Of a stretch of DNA of 64,000 nt, positions 2,686-39,272 are shown piece by piece. Location: positions 61,481 through 125,480 of the forward strand of contig BQFW01000016.1 of assembly GCA_020891255.1 (NCBI GenBank), written 5' to 3'. The DNA is from Entomortierella parvispora E1425. Taxonomy: Eukaryota; Fungi; Mortierellomycota. The notes beneath the pieces are model-generated. The model ran no database searches and had not been told where the DNA came from. It was given only the letters and a program-made list of their open reading frames with translations. Positions within the stretch are counted from its first letter, which is position 1; each line of letters opens with the position of its first letter. A program made the translations under genes and the position numbers.

Positions 2686-3870
2686 ATGGACCGACCAACA
2701 GCGAGTTGCATTCATCCGGATCAAGCGCGCCATCTGCTCCGACATCGTCATCCACGTAGTCGACCCTGGCCTCATTACCGTCGTGGACACGGATGCATCT
2801 GGCTTTGCCGATTGCAGGGCGGAATTAATCCACCCATGAGCGTAAGCTTCTAGCTGTCATTCATTCCATGCGAGCCTGGCGCTACAACCTTGACGGCACC
2901 AAATTCACCATCAACACTGGCCATACTACACTCGTCGACCAGCTTAATGGATGGTTGTTGCGGGAGCACGACTTTGACTTCTACAAACCAGGTTGTGCCC
3001 GACGCTTTCTTGCGCCTACCGGAGTGCCACGACCTAAACCTCCATTAAGCTCTACAACCTCATTCTATCCCTATCCTCCGTCATCCACTACCAGCTTATG
3101 CAGGACTACGAGAGCGACCCTCGCCTCGGACCCATCTATAAGGACTACCTGGAAGGAAGGGTTGCTAATGGATATCGATAACGACCTCCTCTACTTCGCT
3201 CGACGAGGAGTTACTACCTCTAGCCATACCTCGGCACTCTCCCGTCCGCCTCACTCTCTTGCACGACGCCCACGACGCCCACGACTCTGCCACCGCTGGA
3301 CACTTTGGCTTTCAGATGATCTACGACAACCTGCGCCGCTTGTGTGTTGGCCGCACATCGTCGAGGACCAGCAATGCGTTGCCACTTGTGAAAAGTGCCA
3401 GAGGAAAAGATCCCAGGAGCGACCCGTAGGACTGTTGCAACCCCTCTCCATCCTCTCTCAGCGCTGGGACGTTGTCACCATGGACTTACATCTTCCACCC
3501 ACAGCCTGCAACTTCAACGCCATTACGGTCTTTGTCGACAAGCTCACCAAGCTCGAACACTTTGTTCCCAGCACCACTTCCGCCACAGCTGTCGATGTCG
3601 CTCACCAGTTCTTCGACAATATCGTCAAGTTGCATGGCCTCCTCGCGTCCATCATCTGCGACCGCGACACACGTTTTACCGGCAGATTCTCGTAGGATAC
3701 AGACTGCTGGATTTAAAGCTAACTCTGTCTACGGCCTATCACCCACAGACGGATGGACAGACAGAGCTTATGAACAAGACGCTGAAGACTATGTCACGGG
3801 CCTTCGTTGACAATAAACGGTCGAACTGGGACCAGATACTTTCCTTCGCTGCCTTGGATCCTCATCCCTG
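2686..3870 (+). mobile_element. Degenerate Ty3/Gypsy pol relic (RNase H to integrase), same family as 14355-19420
   Basis: Near-colinear with ~17310-18610; QRWDVVTMD, VFVDKLTK, DRDTRF, AYHPQTDGQTE motifs with many frameshifts and deletions. Confidence 0.85.
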
Positions 3871-32856: not shown

Positions 32857-33119
32857 CCCCCCTGCTATCACCCCACGTACCCTAGTTTGTACCGCCATAC
32901 GATCTACCTTGGACCACCACTGCAACCACAGCAAAAAACTGATCTTTTGTTTTGTCTTTTGTTTTGCTGCCGCCTGCTACCAACAAGTTGATGATCTACC
33001 TTGGACAAACACTGCAAAGACCTGTCCTCTTGTTCTTTTGTTTTGCTTCCGCCTGCTACCGCTTGCAACTAACTCATGTAGCCAAGTTTGTACTGCCATA
33101 TGAGCTACTTTGAACCACC

Positions 33120-33150
<31 letters not shown>

Positions 33151-33894
33151 GGCTTGCAATGGATTCGACACGTACTGTTAAACTACAGAGCAAGCCCACA
33201 GCACGCCAACAACTCTTGTGCCTTGCCACCAACCTTTCACGCCTTGCCACCAACTCTCGTGTCTTGCCACCAACTCTCATGTCTTGCCACCAACTCCCAT
33301 GTCTCGCCACCAACCATGCGCGCCTTGCCACCAACTCCCTTGTCTCGCCACCAACCATGCGCGCCTTGCCACCAACTCTCCGTGTCTTGCCACCAAAAAA
33401 AAAAAAAAAAAAGTTGACCAGATCACTTGGGGGACTCTTTCGGTGGCAAGTTCAGGACCTGGGGCCCTGGTACACTGGTTGTAGGTCGTCCACACGTGTA
33501 TCTTTCTAATGATGCCGTCGGGAACCCGGTATCTTGTCAGGATCTCGAGCATCATGACATCAAAGGGGGCCTCCCGTGCTAAACCCATGTAAGGTTGGTG
33601 GCGTTGGGTCGACTTTTCGATGTTTTTAGGGTCGTTTGGGGCTCCTTTTCGGTGGCAAGGTCAGGCCCTGGGGCCCTGGTACCTTGGCTCATAGTAGTCC
33701 TCGGTTGAGGCTATTGAATGACGGTATCAGGAACCCGGAACCCTAATCAGGATCTCGAGCATCTTGAGATCAAAGTTGGTCCCCGAGTGGTCCCCTGTGC
33801 TAGAGCCATGTAAACCCGCCAAAAGTGGGTCCCCCATGCTAGAACTGGGCGGTCCCCCGTGCTAGAGCCGTGCTAGAGCCGTGTAAACCTGCCC
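32857..33894. repeat. Orphan rDNA IGS segment (matches ~60677-61816), resumes at 38826 after the retroelement insertions
   Basis: Colinear identity, including ttgccaccaac subrepeats at 33210-33400. Confidence 0.9.
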
Positions 33895-34517
33895 TTTTTT
33901 TTTATTTTTTTTATTGCAACTTTGATCTTTCTACCCGAGCCACACGAGGGTCTTGTTTGTTATACATCCCCTTCACACTGCAACCAAAGTAGTACATATG
34001 GCGTGGTCAGCTGAATCGAGTCTCCCGTCCGCCCGTACTACACACGTCCCTATGCGACCAGTTGGCAGACTCGTCGCCTGCTAATAAGATCGAGACCTCC
34101 TCGCAATAACCGCCTTCCACCGCCTGGAACACCTTGCCTGCTTGCTGGACGGCCTCGGAGGGGGCCTCGGTGTATCCTCAGAAAATTTCTTGTTTATTGT
34201 CCGACTGTTGGTGTCCGACCGCTTTCACATAGAACATGATCCTGCATATGGCCGACAGCTGTTTTTAGTGGGCTGGACCACCTCGTATACTTAGCACTTT
34301 AACTCAGTGCCTCCTGGTAACTAATCCACATGGGATAAATATCAGCAAGTGCTGTAGGTAGTGAGGTAGTGATACAAACTACCGCCTCTAACTCGAGAGG
34401 CTAGCACAAACGAGGGCGCACCAAGCTGAGATCGAACCCTCGACCTCACGGCACTGTCTCTGGAAGCTTTATTTACTAGGCGCTTTAGACCGCAGTAGCA
34501 AAAGGGCTCGCCCGCCC
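33895..34517 (-). mobile_element. SINE-like retroposon copy 1 (~620 bp, tRNA-like head, poly(A) tail)
   Basis: Reverse complement of 34648-35269 (no difference noticed by eye); poly(T) abuts target gtgtaaacctgccc. Confidence 0.75.
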
Positions 34518-34647
34518 ACCACGCGGCTTTGCTCAGGTTGTAGATAGTTTGGTCTCGCACTTCACTTCTTTGGCTCGACATAGCAAATAAAATGTTGCAA
34601 AAAAAAAAAAAAAAAAAAAAAAAAAGGGGCAGGTTTACATGGCTCTC
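34518..34647 (+). other. Inverted 130-bp spacer carrying the LINE 3' UTR end, A27 tail and target-site copy
   Basis: accacgcggctttgc (reverse complement of 35270-35284)...gttgc(A)27 ggggcaggtttacatggctct. Confidence 0.75.
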
Positions 34648-35269
34648 GGGCGGGCGAGCCCTTTTGCTACTGCGGTCTAAAGCGCCTAGTAAATAAAGCT
34701 TCCAGAGACAGTGCCGTGAGGTCGAGGGTTCGATCTCAGCTTGGTGCGCCCTCGTTTGTGCTAGCCTCTCGAGTTAGAGGCGGTAGTTTGTATCACTACC
34801 TCACTACCTACAGCACTTGCTGATATTTATCCCATGTGGATTAGTTACCAGGAGGCACTGAGTTAAAGTGCTAAGTATACGAGGTGGTCCAGCCCACTAA
34901 AAACAGCTGTCGGCCATATGCAGGATCATGTTCTATGTGAAAGCGGTCGGACACCAACAGTCGGACAATAAACAAGAAATTTTCTGAGGATACACCGAGG
35001 CCCCCTCCGAGGCCGTCCAGCAAGCAGGCAAGGTGTTCCAGGCGGTGGAAGGCGGTTATTGCGAGGAGGTCTCGATCTTATTAGCAGGCGACGAGTCTGC
35101 CAACTGGTCGCATAGGGACGTGTGTAGTACGGGCGGACGGGAGACTCGATTCAGCTGACCACGCCATATGTACTACTTTGGTTGCAGTGTGAAGGGGATG
35201 TATAACAAACAAGACCCTCGTGTGGCTCGGGTAGAAAGATCAAAGTTGCAATAAAAAAAATAAAAAAAA
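34648..35269 (+). mobile_element. SINE-like retroposon copy 2
   Basis: Head with GCGGTCTAAAGCGC (tRNA-Leu/Ser D-arm-like) and B-box GGTTCGATCTC (34727-34737); tail gttgcaataaaaaaaataaaaaaaa; no long ORF. Confidence 0.75.
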
Positions 35270-38200
35270 GCAAAGCCGCGTGGTCCAGACGACAAATGAC
35301 CCCGGATCCCCGCGCAACAAATGCCACGGCTCGTCACCGTGTAATAAAGAAGAGTAAAATGTTACAAAAAATGGATCTTCCCCATCTTTTCTAATGTCGA
35401 TAAATGGACCTGGCCACGCACACAAGCCAGTAGTCGCTGGTCAGCCAGCGTAGGATCGTCTTGGGCACCTGGGCAGAGGCCTTGGTGGTGTTCAGTGTAA
35501 GCCTTGCCGCATTGGCAGATGCCTGGCGCTAGGATCGCACCAGAGGCATTGTTCCACGGCTGCCCCGACGGGGCTGCTTGTTTTTTCATCTTGGGGCGGA
35601 TGCCTTGAGATTTCTCCCAGGCAATGGTGACTTCGCACCGTGTCTTCCAGATACGTGCAAGGGCGTCTCTGTCCAGGCGGCGGATAAACTGGTGAGCAAC
35701 TGCGACCACAACCGAGCGAGGTCCTTTAATAATCGGTGTCCAGGCTGTGATCAGCGCCGAGTGTAACAGTCCTTGGTAGGCAGTGACGATCGACCGTGCT
35801 GACGGCAGTGGAGAGGCAGTCTGTCCCACGTCAGGAGGTCTAATTGTTGGCAAGTCGTGGAATGCAGCGTACAGTGATGTCCACAGGGCCGTGTCCGATG
35901 GCTGATGCCATTGAAGTGCTCTCGGGGCGGCAACGTTGGGTGTGCGGGCTTGTTGCTTACGATGTCTTTTGGTAGCTTCCTCATTGGCTCTGGTGATGGC
36001 AGCTCTGCCCCACTTTGGAATAGTGGCCACTGCTTCCTCCCAAATCTGCCTTTGTTGGTTGACTGAGTTCGGACAAGTCCACACATGGTTGTTGTCCTCC
36101 TGCGCGTCGCCACATCGACAGCAGAGTGCGTCTTCGTACATGTCTGGGTAGCGCGCTTGCATGACTGTAAGTGTTGGTAGCATCCCATGCAGTTTTTTGA
36201 TGTGCTGTGTGCGTCGGGTAGTGTCCCCTCTGCTACTGAAGAAAGTATGGACTGGCCGTTTGGCGTGGATGATCGAGAGGGCAGATCGCCACTCCGCGTC
36301 GTCCAAGTCGCTGATTGCTCTCTTAACTCGATGCTGTGCTGTCCATGTTTGGTGGCGGCGAATAGTGGTCTGTTGCTTGAGGAATTGGCGCAAGTCAGAC
36401 TCCAACTGTTGTCCATGGCAAGATGCAATAAAGGTGATGTCGCCCTGGGTGCTGAGGTCCGCCTGCCATGGTGTCGTGTCCTGTTCAACCGCCTTGGTTG
36501 CGATAGCATCCGCCATTTCGTTGCCCTGGTCGCCACTGTGCCCACGCACCCACTCAACCTCTGTGCGGCCCTCACGTTCTGCTACTACTGATGCCAAAAC
36601 TGCCCAGAGGCCTGCGTGTGTTGCCCGTTGTCGCTTACGAGGCAAAGTTGTGTGGCGGTCGACAACAAGGTCTTGAAAGGAAGTGACAACGCCCTCGTTA
36701 TCAAGGCGGACCAAAATATCTTGTCCAGGAGGCATGGCCACGATTGCGGCAAGAAGTCCCATGAGCTCTGGTTTGCCTGAGGATGCCTGACCGTCAGCAC
36801 GACCCGGGATGGAGTGGGGGGCGGTAGTAGAGATGTCGGCCACGCCAAATGCCATTGCGCATTCCTTCGTACCAGCGCGGACCATAGAGCCGTCAGAGTA
36901 GAGTACTTTACGCTCTTGTGAAATTGGTGACTGGCGTAGCTGGTGTAGAAGTTCAGCTTGGGCTTGAGGCATTGAAAGTGGGCCGACCTTGGCAATCTGC
37001 TCATGACATGGAGGAGGCAAAGGAGGGGGTGAGATGTAGAGAGGATGAACAGCACTTTGGTCAACAGTGACAGTGAGTGGGTGTAAGTGTTGTTCAACAC
37101 GTTCTCTGTTGGTGGTCACATCCCGGTCCCGTTCCTTGATAGCCTGGGAAATGTAGTCTGCTCTGATTTGCTGCCGTTGTTCAGCCTCCGCCAGATGTTG
37201 TTGATGTTTGTTGACTGCAAAGTCGTGTGCGTCCTTGAGTTTGCGGGCAAGGCGATCGGCAAGGAGCCCAAGTTGGAGCTGTGCACGGACTTGTAGAGTC
37301 CGAAGCCCCTGTTGGGCGATCCGTTCAGCCTCCTTGATAGCGGTGGCCAGCTGTTGTGGTTTCGTGGCCAACAGACGTCGATAACGTGAAGCATCGGACT
37401 GAAGCTGTTGGCGCCTCTTTTCCAACGCGGCCTGCAGCTCTTGGACGAGCTGGGTCCTGGCTGGGATGGTGTCTGAGTCAGCTGCATTAAGACGTGTGGT
37501 CAGAGCGTCGTCAAGCCAACGAGAAGATCCGTGAAGCAAGTCGTCTGCATCTAGTGGCAGTCGTGCCAAGTACGTCGATGGCGGTGTGTCAGCAACAAGA
37601 TTGTTGGTGGCATCTATGCTGGCGGAAACTGAACGCGAAAGTGGAGTTACGCCAAGGGTGGTGTCTGTGTCAGGAAAAAGCCGTCGAACGGCAGGGACTG
37701 CAATGAAAGTGGGTGAAAATGAAGAAAACTGTGAAGAAGGTTGTGCAGATAACGGTGTTGATGAAACGGGAGTGAGTGATGAAGAAAGGATAGGTGACGA
37801 AGGAGTGATGACAGGGGAGGAAGAGGGGGATAAAAAGGAAGGACCGCTTGCTCCCAAAGACGATGGCGTTGAAGGTAACAGAGAAGAAGGTGACAATGTA
37901 GGATGAGAAGAAGAAGATGAAGACAAAGAAGAAGGATGGGAGTGCGATCCGGGCACGTATGGTCCCATGTACTCTTGTTTTTCTTTTTTTTTTTTTGACT
38001 CTTTTCCAATCTGGTCTTGTTGGCTGTGAGGGTGTGCAGACCGTGCAGCAGGCAGGGTGTGCCTTGCCTTTTGAGTGTGACGTGAGCCCTTTTTGCTTTT
38101 TTGTTGTTCTTTTGTGTCTTTTTGTTGTTCGTTCTTTTTGTCCTGCACGGTCATGTTTGCATCTTGTCCACACTCCCCACTCTTGTTCCGCACCACCGTT

Positions 38201-38825
38201 CCCACGCGCACCTTGCTCCAGTCCTCTTCCTCTTGAACCTGCTCGCACGCCACCTCTTTTCCCTTGGGGCTCCGTGGTCCTCTTGGCATCTCATCGTCCT
38301 GCTCCTCTCCCGACGACTCTTGATCCGTGAACGCCATATCCATCTCCCTTATCTCCTCGTCGACCACCTCTGCGCCGTCGCCGTCGCAGTGGTCGTCGTC
38401 CGCACTCTCTTCTAATGGATACGATTGAGTAAGTGTGTCTTGTGTGTCTTGGTTTTTGTCTGGCTTTGTTTGTTTGTCTTCATCGTCCTCGTTGAGCGGA
38501 TGAGTCACTGCCGAAGCAGCTGCTGTAGACACTGCCTTTTGAAAATTGTTTTTGTTTATACTCACCCGCTCAACAACACCTGTAGTTTCTGTGGGGGTGC
38601 TCGCTGTCTGAAAGAGTGCTCGTCGCCGGATTCGTGGATCAACCAACGGCTCAGAATCGGTATCGGACAGCTCGTATACACTGGAGGCATCGGATAGGGC
38701 TGTGGCGGGCTCGTGCTTCTCGATCAGTTCAGCAGAAGCAGGGGCGCAGAGATGAACAGAAAGGGCTGCGTACCATGCACGCGTCGGGCCTTGGAAGCGA
38801 TGTCTTGCTTGGAGGGCGCGCCACG
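35270..38825 (-). mobile_element. 5'-truncated non-LTR retrotransposon (LINE) with RNase H and C-terminal CCHC; 14-bp TSD gtgtaaacctgccc
   Basis: Target sequence at 33881-33894 and 38826-38839; empty site in the array at 61803-61816; poly(A) tail displaced into the inverted spacer. Confidence 0.85.
35362..38825 (-). CDS. LINE ORF2 C-terminal part: long disordered/coiled-coil region + RNase H + zinc finger
   Basis: YSDGS, PELMGLL, RLDN, WVRGHSGDQGNEMAD, CCRCGDAQEDNNHVWTC; manual translation shows the frame stays open from 38646 up to the insertion junction. Confidence 0.85.
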
Positions 38826-38924
38826 GTGTAAACCTGCCCCCCAGGCTAGAACCGGGTCAGAAAGTGATCGGCCCCTGAAAAAATTTGTCGGTACTTGAAC
38901 AAGAAATTTTTGAAGACCTTTCGG

Positions 38925-39027
38925 ATTACGGCCATACACGACTAAACCCACCGCATCCCCGTCCGATCTGCGCAGTTAAACAGTCGATGGCAGAGTCAGT
39001 ACTATGGTGGGGGACCACATGGGAATA
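38925..39027 (+). pseudogene. 3'-truncated 5S rRNA copy
   Basis: Matches 60470 onward up to gggaata (one extra C), then lacks the last ~15 nt and the T-run. Confidence 0.9.
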
Positions 39028-39272
39028 ATGTATACACACAATAAACGAACGACACCTTTCTTTCTCTTGATGCCCTCGCCAAATCTTACACAGTCAAGAA
39101 CTGGTTCATCTTGTGGATGTGTTTGTATGCGATAGAAAATACGTCTGTGACAAGAGGGGTTTATTTTTGTTTTTTGACAACAGACTGCCAATGCTGCACC
39201 CCAATCCGTACAATTCATGAGCAAAAAGCCATTCTTGATGTGACCAAATCACAGCGTTCGGCCCTAAGGAGT

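What the first reader, a model, noticed from the sequence alone, without database searches (positions are those of the whole stretch)
33881..39027. Candidate Pol III-promoter-targeted LINE/SINE system: three insertions with the same geometry
Seen: an IGS copy is interrupted at gtgtaaacctgccc (empty site at 61803-61816), 86-100 bp upstream of a 5S gene, by a LINE and a SINE, both with poly(A) away from and 5' end toward the 5S. A second SINE copy sits head-to-head with the first, 115-130 bp from its tRNA-like head, in an unrelated target (gcaaagccgcgtggt). Inference: the order SINE1 (~20-bp TSD, 1 mismatch), then LINE (14-bp TSD), then SINE2 (15-bp TSD) puts every event just upstream of a Pol III start. 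Different target sequences and no T-rich priming site argue for position-directed targeting. Established analogue: Dictyostelium TRE5-A inserts orientation-specifically upstream of tRNA genes through TFIIIB contact. I do not know of this for a fungal non-LTR element.
Basis: partly seen in the sequence, partly recalled or inferred. Interest (0 to 1): 0.9.

Follow-up and report, generated by a model that had tools for sequence, protein, structure and literature searches.

The report
Fungal jumping elements aimed at tRNA genes
A family of jumping DNA elements in this Mortierella-like soil fungus lands again and again about 95-130 bases in front of tRNA genes, a 5S RNA gene and its own short partner element, always facing them. 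I found this aiming habit described only for amoebae, not for this class of element in fungi.

Summary
The features are at the stated coordinates, with one correction. The 130 bp between the two identical, inverted 622-nt SINE copies is flipped. It carries the LINE's 3' end and poly(A).

- Of about 36 independent LINE/SINE sites in this genome, 17 lie head-to-head upstream of a tRNA gene and one lies upstream of the window's 5S gene.
- At 14 tRNA sites with TSDs, the first-strand nick is a median 94 bp (sd 8) from the tRNA 5' end.
- Target sequences differ between sites.
- Repeated hits reuse the same nick and form stacks.
- At the 5S gene the nick is 84 bp from +1.
- SINE-type heads are hit two or three times.
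- A relative with 38% protein identity, from soil metagenomes, shows the same geometry.

The LINE encodes APE, RT, a long linker, RNase H and a Cys-rich tail. The SINE shares its last ~35 nt.

Contact with TFIIIB is inferred, not shown. About a third of the sites have no recognisable Pol III gene.

First-stage readers flagged the same family elsewhere in this genome.

I rate it a new variant of a known kind, the TRE5-like elements of Dictyostelium.

The parts
32858..33894 (.). Left part of an orphan rDNA intergenic-spacer fragment. Its last 20 nt (33875-33894, agagccgtgtaaacctgccc) are the outer copy of SINE-A's target-site duplication.
   Evidence: BLAST to the intact spacer 60677-61816 at 91-93%; alignment A2.
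33895..34517 (-). SINE-A. Its A-rich tail is at the left and its head (GGGCGGGCGAGCCC...) at the right, pointing toward the 5S gene.
   Evidence: 622-nt arm, 100% complementary to 34648-35269; related genomic copies.
34518..34647 (+). Inverted 130-bp middle segment. It holds LINE positions 3542-3623 (34518-34599, starting with accacgcggctttgc), poly(A) (34599-34625), and then ggggcaggtttacaTggctctc, the reverse complement of the spacer target. That last stretch contains the LINE's 14-nt TSD copy and SINE-A's 20-nt TSD copy (1 mismatch).
   Evidence: The 82 nt follow LINE position 3541 on the same strand in over 40 other copies. Flipping the segment makes all TSDs direct and restores LINE continuity as in copy L014.
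34648..35269 (+). SINE-B, inserted into the LINE's 3' region and head-to-head with SINE-A.
   Evidence: After the flip it is flanked by gcaaagccgcgtggt on both sides.
35270..35284 (.). gcaaagccgcgtggt. This is the 15-nt TSD of SINE-B and the reverse complement of LINE positions 3542-3556.
35285..38825 (-). LINE body, 5'-truncated just after the RT domain, with its 5' end facing the 5S gene.
   Evidence: 97% identical to C9:1385644-1388291 and 78% to three longer copies. The longer copies carry APE and RT upstream.
35362..38646 (-). Open 1094-aa remnant of ORF2: low-complexity and coiled-coil linker, RNase H (aa 579-720, about 36487-36912), then a ~370-aa Cys-rich C-terminal domain.
   Evidence: ORF list; Pfam RNase_H at 3.7e-12. 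The C-terminal domain resembles many Mucoromycota clusters and, more distantly, zf-RVT clusters.
38826..38840 (.). gtgtaaacctgccc(c). This is the gene-proximal copy of the target. The first-strand nick boundary lies at 38839/38840, 84 bp from 5S +1.
   Evidence: Direct repeat D9; alignment to the empty site.
38924..39027 (+). 5S rRNA gene of the orphan spacer. The internal control region is present, there is one extra C, and homology ends near 39027, so the terminator is lost.
   Evidence: Rfam RF00001 at 64.8 bits; alignment A2.
61803..62015 (+). Reference empty site (61803-61816) and its intact 5S gene (61897-62015) in a normal rDNA unit.

Best explanation
What is shown
- The window holds a stack of three retrotranspositions made by one LINE family and its non-autonomous partner, followed by one rearrangement.
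- The LINE is of the APE type. Relatives have an ORF1 with an RRM and a CCHC knuckle. ORF2 reads APE, RT, a ~900-aa linker, RNase H and a Cys-rich tail.
- Across the genome, its first-strand cut falls about 90-117 bp upstream of the mature 5' end of tRNA genes, most often 90-96 bp. It is on the strand that carries the gene, so the element always ends up with its 5' end facing the gene and its poly(A) pointing away.
- The second cut is 13-24 bp further out.
- Later insertions reuse the same first cut, giving stacks with the youngest copy nearest the gene.
- The 622-nt SINE has the LINE's last ~35 nt and the same geometry.

What is inferred
- The cut corresponds to roughly 85 bp from the Pol III start site.
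- The SINE is copied in trans by the LINE.
- In the window, SINE-A landed 84 bp upstream of a 5S gene in an rDNA spacer. A 5'-truncated LINE then landed at the same nick. SINE-B then landed 115 bp upstream of SINE-A's head, inside the LINE's 3' end. Recombination between the two identical inverted SINEs finally flipped the 130 bp between them.
- The ruler is anchored on the TFIIIB/start-site side of the Pol III complex, by a protein contact of the TRE5-A ORF1-TFIIIB type.
For: - Geometry: 17 tRNA sites plus the 5S site are head-to-head. The element's 5' end lies 104-155 bp away by BLAST ends, and 108-135 bp at the 14 tRNA sites with a TSD.
- First nick: median 94 bp, sd 8, n=14. For the 5S gene it is 84 bp from +1.
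- Chance: P<1e-40 for 17 of 35 sites, even assuming 1193 tRNA genes. A genome announcement for Entomortierella parvispora, the species an earlier scan note names for this genome, reports 192 tRNA genes (PMC8759367).
- Target sequence: TSDs are 13-24 bp with unrelated sequences, and there is no consensus at the nick.
- Stacks reuse one TSD at C9:250466-252024, C1:2879746-2880447, C12:754282-754621, C15:986769-992586 and the window.
- Anchor: the distance does not shift for intron-containing tRNA-Arg(CCT) (102) or tRNA-Lys (91), nor for 85-nt tRNA-Leu (92, 110). This places the anchor at the 5' side, not at the B box.
- The nick-to-CACGTG distance is more variable (sd 14.6) than nick-to-tRNA.
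- SINE-type heads as targets: the window, a SINE at C13:2397166 that is 109 bp from a diverged head, and a LINE at C8:2349600.
- The SINE and LINE tails are shared. Seven of about 9 SINE copies sit at such sites.
- A LINE with 38% protein identity in soil metagenomes lies ~120 bp head-to-head from tRNA-Lys (L082). In L083 it lies ~146 bp from a partial tRNA that I read by eye; ARAGORN did not call it. These copies also have TSDs and stacks.
- Inversion.
Against: - About a third of the sites, several with clean TSDs (C3:1243933, C10:1796183, C15:1928753, C5:1799286), have no tRNA, 5S or other Rfam family within 1.5 kb, even at E<=5.
- Only one of about 11 assembled 5S genes is occupied.
- The SINE head has no Rfam tRNA match and contains T4 runs, so Pol III transcription of it is unproven.
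- Most tRNA genes here also carry CACGTGA and often TTAAGGG upstream, so a factor bound there could be the real landmark.
- One LINE 3' site (gcaaagccgcgtggt) was hit twice, in the window and at C4:661481. This hints at some sequence or structure preference.
- No protein contact, expression data or de novo integration data exist.
- The inversion could not be checked with reads.
Confidence: 0.75

Rival explanations
1. The landmark is not the Pol III machinery. It is a sequence-specific factor or an open-chromatin feature that usually accompanies tRNA genes in this fungus: the CACGTGA (Cbf1/Pho4-type) site, TTAAGGG or TTGGTGGC. The LINE cuts next to it.
For: - 17 of 21 tRNA genes in the fetched loci have CACGTG at -54 to -107, and TTAAGGG often abuts the nick.
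- Three sites without a detectable tRNA have CACGTG next to the insertion: C1:2867195, C8:2337059 and C5:1799286.
Against: - Insertions with the same geometry occur where the motifs are absent: the 5S gene, tRNA-Lys at C9:663706 and tRNA-Leu(TAA) at C5:1749692.
- The nick-to-motif distance ranges from -4 to 39 (sd 14.6), against sd 8 to the tRNA.
- Two of the three motif-only sites have a 1.2-kb repeat sitting 84-97 bp away, where the tRNA would be expected.
Confidence: 0.15
2. Insertion is essentially random, and only copies in harmless places near tRNA genes survive selection.
For: The genome is compact (38.9 Mb). Other repeats also crowd around tRNA genes.
Against: Selection cannot produce these features: a single orientation, an 8-bp spread of the nick, reuse of the identical nick in stacks, and absence from the equally harmless downstream side.
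Confidence: 0.03
3. The flipped 130-bp segment is not a fixed inversion. It is either an assembly error or one of two isomers that interconvert by recombination between the identical inverted SINEs.
For: - The two arms are 100% identical over 622 nt, which is ideal for flip-flop recombination or gene conversion.
- Both isomers have identical local junctions, so short-read contigs cannot tell them apart.
Against: Reads longer than about 1.4 kb would span the whole structure, so an assembly built from such reads should resolve it. The genome announcement that may describe this assembly cites long-read assemblers (PMC8759367); I did not confirm that it is the same assembly. The junction contig 38319-38855 in the likely source run agrees with the assembly.
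Confidence: 0.2
4. The LINE is an rDNA-specific, sequence-specific element of the R1/R2 kind, and the spacer site is its recognition sequence.
For: The window copy lies in rDNA spacer sequence, and two elements used the same site.
Against: Only this one of more than 40 copies is in rDNA-derived DNA. The other targets have unrelated sequences. It has an APE endonuclease, not a restriction-like one.
Confidence: 0.01

Closest known systems
Dictyostelium discoideum TRE5-A (tRNA gene-targeted non-LTR retrotransposon)
   Same: - Poly(A) non-LTR element with APE and RT.
- Orientation-specific insertion upstream of tRNA genes with its 5' end facing the gene.
- Also hits a 5S gene on rDNA (PMC5391098, PMC5911963).
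- Variable target sequence.
- Lives in a compact genome.
   Different: - Distance: TRE5 inserts 40-54 bp from the mature tRNA end. Here the first nick is at about 94 bp and the element's 5' end at 108-135 bp.
- TRE ORF2 is APE-RT-zinc finger without RNase H (PMC5006619). This LINE has a ~900-aa linker, RNase H and a long C-terminal domain.
- ORF1 in relatives has an RRM and a CCHC knuckle.
- The host is a fungus.
- The TFIIIB contact is shown for TRE5-A and untested here.
[quoted passage not shown]
   Same: RNase H-bearing non-LTR elements that independently acquired integration upstream of tRNA genes (PMC5006619).
   Different: Their distances are 2-6 bp and 39-64 bp. They are amoebozoan. I did not test their relationship to this LINE.
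Fungal LTR retrotransposons aimed at Pol III genes (Ty1, Ty3, Tj1, Yarrowia Tyl/Ylt; Rhizopus Ty3-like elements near tRNA genes)
   Same: Same kingdom and the same safe haven. Targets include tRNA and 5S genes (PMC5911963, PMC2699053).
   Different: They are integrase-mediated LTR elements. Their distances are 1-10 bp (Ty3, Tj1) or a broad 1-kb window (Ty1). This element uses target-primed reverse transcription.
SINE/LINE partner pairs with a shared 3' tail
   Same: A non-coding element with a defined 5' end, an A-rich tail, TSDs, the last ~35 nt shared with the LINE, and the same insertion geometry.
   Different: It is 622 nt long with only about 7-9 copies. The head is not a recognisable tRNA. 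The head module also occurs as a single locus at C15:1911139 and just upstream of a LINE relative in a metagenome contig.

Membership tests
TRE5-like Pol III-gene-targeted non-LTR retrotransposons (functional class) | Non-LTR element with an APE endonuclease, RT, a poly(A) tail and TSDs | tested here: met
   Pfam Exo_endo_phos, RVT_1 and RNase_H in longer copies and relatives. Poly(A) tails and 13-24-bp TSDs.
TRE5-like Pol III-gene-targeted non-LTR retrotransposons (functional class) | Most copies lie upstream of tRNA genes in one orientation, 5' end toward the gene, at a narrow distance | tested here: met
   17 tRNA sites, all divergent. Nick at a median 94 bp, sd 8. P<1e-40. About a third of sites have no recognisable Pol III gene.
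TRE5-like Pol III-gene-targeted non-LTR retrotransposons (functional class) | Other Pol III genes (5S) are also hit at the equivalent position | tested here: met
   The window 5S gene has the nick 84 bp from +1. This is a single case among about 11 assembled 5S genes.
TRE5-like Pol III-gene-targeted non-LTR retrotransposons (functional class) | Targeting depends on TFIIIC/TFIIIB assembly and on an element protein that binds TFIIIB | not testable with these tools
No complex prediction was run.
TRE family proper (Dictyostelium TRE5/TRE3 lineage) | ORF2 = APE-RT-zinc finger without RNase H; integration 40-54 bp upstream | tested here: not met
   RNase H is present. The distance is about 94-130 bp. 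TRE features are taken from PMC5006619 and PMC5911963.
RNase H-bearing APE LINEs (Tad1/I-like group) | Domain order APE-RT-RNase H, with ORF1 carrying an RRM and/or CCHC | tested here: met
   I did not assign a clade by phylogeny. The nearest solved RT is human L1 ORF2p at E=1e-15.
tRNA-derived SINE | 5' head derived from a tRNA, with A and B boxes | tested here: inconclusive
   No Rfam tRNA match at E<=10. ARAGORN found nothing. A B-box-like GGTTCGA and a conserved ~100-nt head module are shared with two other loci.
tRNA-derived SINE | 3' tail shared with a partner LINE, TSDs, A-rich end, several copies with a common 5' end | tested here: met
rDNA-specific LINEs (R1/R2 type) | One fixed recognition sequence in rDNA | tested here: not met
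   One of more than 40 copies is in rDNA-derived DNA, and targets are unrelated in sequence.

The most novel reading that the evidence does not exclude
An RNase H-bearing LINE clade of Mortierella-like fungi, conserved down to 38% protein identity, has independently evolved integration anchored on the start-site (TFIIIB) side of the Pol III complex. It cuts about 85 bp upstream of the start site of tRNA genes, 5S genes and SINE heads, and it carries a partner SINE that is both passenger and new target. This would be the first non-LTR case of Pol III-directed integration outside the social amoebae, with a ruler about twice as long as TRE5-A's.
Probability: 0.6. Interest if true: 0.8.

Novelty: new variant of a known kind. 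Interest (0 to 1): 0.7.

Why it matters
- Among non-LTR retrotransposons, position-specific integration at Pol III genes is documented only in dictyostelid amoebae. The 2018 review's table (PMC5911963) lists no fungal LINE, and my full-text searches found none.
- A fungal case from an unrelated LINE lineage would be a clean example of convergent 'safe-haven' targeting in compact genomes.
- It would offer a second system for asking how a target-primed element reads the Pol III complex. Here the cut is sharp but about 50 bp beyond the usual TFIIIB footprint.
- It suggests natural protein modules, in ORF1 or the long ORF2 linker, that tether a reverse transcriptase to a defined chromosomal address.
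- It also explains why tRNA upstream regions in this genome are nests of repeats.

Tried and rejected
- Fetching the 5' end of the longest LINE copy (C2) and more flanks failed.
- The SINE head against Rfam at E<=10 gave no tRNA. The related head in L078 also gave nothing.
- I looked for sub-threshold tRNA or other Rfam families at 11 loci without a tRNA and found nothing at E<=5. The tRNA-like sequences I saw by eye or with relaxed ARAGORN at C2:3598783, C5:1799446, C3:1243933 and C15:24861 are therefore only weak leads and are not counted as hits.
- Reads: only short contigs of public runs were available. They confirm the LINE/spacer junction in the likely source run, but they cannot resolve the inversion or show expression. 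The 'opposite strands' joint 34518/35296 reflects other, uninterrupted LINE copies.
- Contigs of relatives P0001, P0003 and P0005 had too little 5' flank to test.
- Twin priming as the cause of the inverted 3' end is rejected. The flipped piece is bounded exactly by the two SINE heads and carries spacer target sequence.
- A single SINE insertion followed by an inverted duplication is rejected. It does not explain the extra 7 nt of spacer (agagcca) next to SINE-B's head.
- Complex prediction was not run, because no host TFIIIB sequences were obtainable.
Full report
**1. What is in the window**

Rfam finds a weak 5S gene at 38924-39044 and two good ones at 60469 and 61897, inside a normal rDNA unit whose 18S-5.8S-28S lie on the minus strand. 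The region 32858-33894 plus 38826-~39027 is an orphan piece of the rDNA spacer. It matches 60677-61985 of the intact unit and is split exactly at gtgtaaacctgccc. The uninterrupted site is at 61803-61816.

Between the two halves lie four blocks:
- a 622-nt element on the minus strand (33895-34517);
- 130 bp (34518-34647);
- the same element on the plus strand (34648-35269), 100% identical;
- 3.5 kb of LINE on the minus strand (35285-38825), with an open 1094-aa reading frame whose only Pfam domain is RNase H.

**2. The correction: an inversion**

In more than 40 other copies in this genome, the 82 nt at 34518-34599 directly follow the last base of the LINE body on the same strand. In the window they lie on the opposite strand, separated from the body by SINE-B.

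SINE-A's 5' flank (gcaaagccgcgtggt) equals SINE-B's 3' flank. SINE-A's 3' flank (gggcaggtttaca...) equals SINE-B's 5' flank. That pattern is the signature of recombination between two inverted repeats.

Flipping 34518-34647 in silico has three effects:
- SINE-A is flanked by agagcc[g/a]tgtaaacctgccc (20 nt, 1 mismatch).
- The LINE is flanked by tgtaaacctgcccc (14 nt), and SINE-B by gcaaagccgcgtggt (15 nt).
- LINE continuity across the SINE-B site is restored exactly as in the uninterrupted copy on contig 9.

I could not tell from public data whether the flip is fixed, interconverting or an assembly choice. Both isomers have the same local junctions, and only short contigs were available.

**3. 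What the elements are**

Three longer copies are 78% identical to the window copy and nearly identical to each other. They extend upstream into an RT domain, and one extends into the C-terminal part of an APE endonuclease, in one open frame.

Relatives with 57-60% protein identity occur in soil and bog metagenomes. They show the full plan:
- ORF1 of about 700 aa with an RRM and a CCHC knuckle;
- ORF2 of about 2400 aa, in the order APE, RT, a ~900-aa linker without known domains, RNase H, and a ~400-aa Cys-rich tail.

The window copy is truncated just after the RT.

The 622-nt element has these properties:
- no long ORF;
- a fixed 5' end (GGGCGGGCGAGCCC) in four independent copies;
- an A-rich tail;
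- a last ~35 nt that matches the LINE tail (TGGCTCG..TAG.AA....AA.GTTGCAA). That tail is 99% conserved between two LINE subfamilies that are only 78% alike elsewhere.

I accept it as a LINE-dependent SINE-like element. Its head is not a recognisable tRNA. It has a B-box-like GGTTCGA and belongs to a conserved ~100-nt module. That module is also seen next to a SINE on contig 13, as a lone locus on contig 15, and in a metagenome contig.

**4. The genome-wide test**

I collected every LINE and SINE match with its 1.5-kb flanks. I merged the pieces, called tRNA genes with ARAGORN, checked part of them with Rfam, and defined TSDs.

Of about 36 independent sites, 17 have a tRNA gene beyond the element's 5' end and the window has a 5S gene. 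In all 18 the gene is on the opposite strand. The element's 5' end lies 104-155 bp from the gene's 5' end by BLAST ends, and 108-135 bp at the 14 tRNA sites with a TSD. [quoted passage not shown] For 14 sites with TSDs, the gene-proximal edge of the TSD marks where target-primed reverse transcription starts. It is 90-117 bp from the mature tRNA end, with median 94 and sd 8. Ten of the 14 fall within 90-96.

A random insertion would meet these criteria with probability 2e-4 to 1e-3. The chance of 17 of 35 doing so is below 1e-40.

TSDs have unrelated sequences and there is no nick consensus.

At five sites, two to four copies are stacked, each flanked by the same TSD. Repeated cutting at one position measured from the gene would produce exactly this, with the newest copy nearest the gene.

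**5. What anchors the ruler**

The distance is unchanged for a tRNA-Arg with a 58-nt intron (102), a tRNA-Lys with an intron (91) and 85-nt tRNA-Leu genes (92, 110). The B box is therefore not the reference point.

For the 5S gene, which has a different internal promoter, the nick is 84 bp from +1. If tRNA transcription starts roughly 5-10 nt before the mature end (general knowledge; about 10 bp in PMC5911963), both kinds of gene give about 85 bp from the start site. This fits an anchor on the TFIIIB/start-site side. It is an inference.

**6. The main rival**

Most tRNA genes in the fetched loci, targeted or not, carry one or two CACGTGA elements at -54 to -107. They often also carry TTAAGGG near -90 and TTGGTGGC. 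The nick often abuts TTAAGGG.

However, the same geometry occurs where these motifs are absent: the 5S gene, tRNA-Lys and tRNA-Leu(TAA). The nick-to-CACGTG distance also varies about twice as much as nick-to-tRNA.

Three sites have CACGTG but no tRNA. In two of them a 1.2-kb repeat begins 84-97 bp away, where the gene would be expected.

I keep this rival at about 0.15.

**7. SINE heads as targets**

- In the window, SINE-B's nick is 115 bp from SINE-A's first base.
- On contig 13, a SINE lies head-to-head 109 bp (nick about 89) from a diverged copy of the same head module.
- On contig 8, a LINE fragment lies head-to-head about 80-107 bp from a SINE whose first 30 nt are altered.

**8. Limits**

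- About a third of the sites, several with clean TSDs, show no tRNA, 5S or any Rfam family within 1.5 kb, even at E<=5.
- Only one of about 11 assembled 5S genes is occupied.
- One LINE 3' site was used twice, in the window and at C4:661481, with TSD gcaaagccgcgtggtcgtcg.
- No expression data, de novo integration data or protein contact has been obtained.

**9. Conservation**

A LINE family with only 38% ORF2 identity (P0004) comes from several soil metagenome samples and shows the same habit:
- In L082 its common 5' end lies about 120 bp head-to-head from tRNA-Lys, with a 19-bp TSD.
- In L083 it lies about 146 bp from a partial serine-type tRNA at the contig edge, which I read by eye; ARAGORN did not call it.
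- L085 shows a stack.

The preference is therefore a property of the clade, not of one genome.

**10. Comparison and novelty**

In function this is a TRE5-like system: a non-LTR element, upstream of Pol III genes, 5' end toward the gene, with 5S also hit (PMC5391098, PMC5911963).

It is not a member of the TRE lineage. It has RNase H, a very long linker and a different ORF1, and its distance is about twice as long (PMC5006619).

The 2018 review lists non-LTR tRNA targeting only in dictyostelids. It lists only LTR elements for fungi (PMC5911963). The Rhizopus genome paper notes tRNA co-localisation for Ty3-like LTR elements only (PMC2699053). My searches found no description of a fungal LINE with this behaviour, though the library lacks most subscription journals.

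First-stage readers of this scan flagged the same family at other places in this genome. Those notes are unverified and are not independent support.

An earlier scan note names the organism Entomortierella parvispora. The published assembly size is close to this genome's but not identical (PMC8759367). I did not verify the species.

**Verdict**

The protein mechanism is inferred. I rate it a new variant of a known kind.

Noticed in passing
L003, L004, L009, L014, L020, L026, L042, L053, L065, L071, L073, L074 (tRNA upstream regions); window 33205-33396: 17 of 21 tRNA genes in the fetched loci have one or two CACGTGA elements 54-107 bp upstream. Many also have TTAAGGG near -90 and TTGGTGGC. This includes tRNA genes with no insertion. 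The chance expectation is about 1.5% per gene. The window's spacer carries a tandem array of 20-bp units containing GCCACCAAC, the reverse complement of the third motif. This may be an undescribed upstream element of tRNA genes in this fungus.
   Followed up: partly
L037:1052-1500 (C3:1466667-1467115) and about 14 other places in the fetched loci: A ~315-bp LTR-like repeat (tgttaattgtaagt...) recurs 150-200 bp beyond the LINE's 3' end at many tRNA sites. Before the LINE insertion it would have sat roughly 250-300 bp upstream of the tRNA gene. It is probably a second family associated with tRNA upstream regions.
   Followed up: partly
L060:1-1242 (C8:2335720-2336961) and L023 (C1:2865870-2867111): A repeat of at least 1.24 kb, 99.8% identical between two places (starts tgtcgtgactctcgg). 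It begins 84-97 bp from LINE 5' ends that have CACGTGA upstream regions but no tRNA. It may be an element inserted right at a tRNA gene start.
   Followed up: partly
L074:353-770: A repeat lying 20-60 bp downstream of tRNA-Val has about 20 relatives in the genome. At least two of them also lie 35-58 bp downstream of tRNA genes (C2:2002177-2002600, C11:1058442-1058861). This hints at a separate family aimed at the downstream side of tRNA genes.
   Followed up: no
L078:1-139; G000 C15:1911139-1911211 (-): The ~100-nt SINE head module (GGCGGGCGA.CC ... AAGCTTCCAGAGA.CAGTG ... GGTTCGA ... TTGGTGCG) occurs once on its own in this genome. In a metagenome contig it sits 40 bp upstream of a LINE relative on the same strand, while two other copies of that LINE start at the same base without it. 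It could be an unknown small Pol III RNA gene captured by template switching. No Rfam family matches it.
   Followed up: partly
L034-L036, L038-L042 (for example C12:86078-86789): A 712-bp LINE 3' fragment (76% identical) with a short poly(A) is embedded in at least 12 copies of another repeat, with identical flanks on both sides. This looks like one old insertion that was amplified as a passenger of a different element.
   Followed up: no
L020, L029, L062 (C4:661365-663338): A nest next to tRNA-Arg holds SINE fragments, an inverted LINE 3' piece and three LINE pieces. One LINE has a 20-bp TSD, gcaaagccgcgtggtcgtcg. This is the same site in the LINE 3' end that SINE-B used in the window.
   Followed up: partly
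L045, L046 (C5:1799286-1799446 and C5:1349046-1349205): Two short LINE copies 450 kb apart share the same 3' flank but have different 5' flanks. This points to a duplication or to recombination between copies.
   Followed up: no
window 38924-39060 and 47466-48068: The orphan 5S gene loses homology near 39027, so its terminator is missing. A 0.6-kb fragment of the 28S 3' end lies alone at 47466-48068. The window covers a ragged edge of the rDNA array.
   Followed up: no
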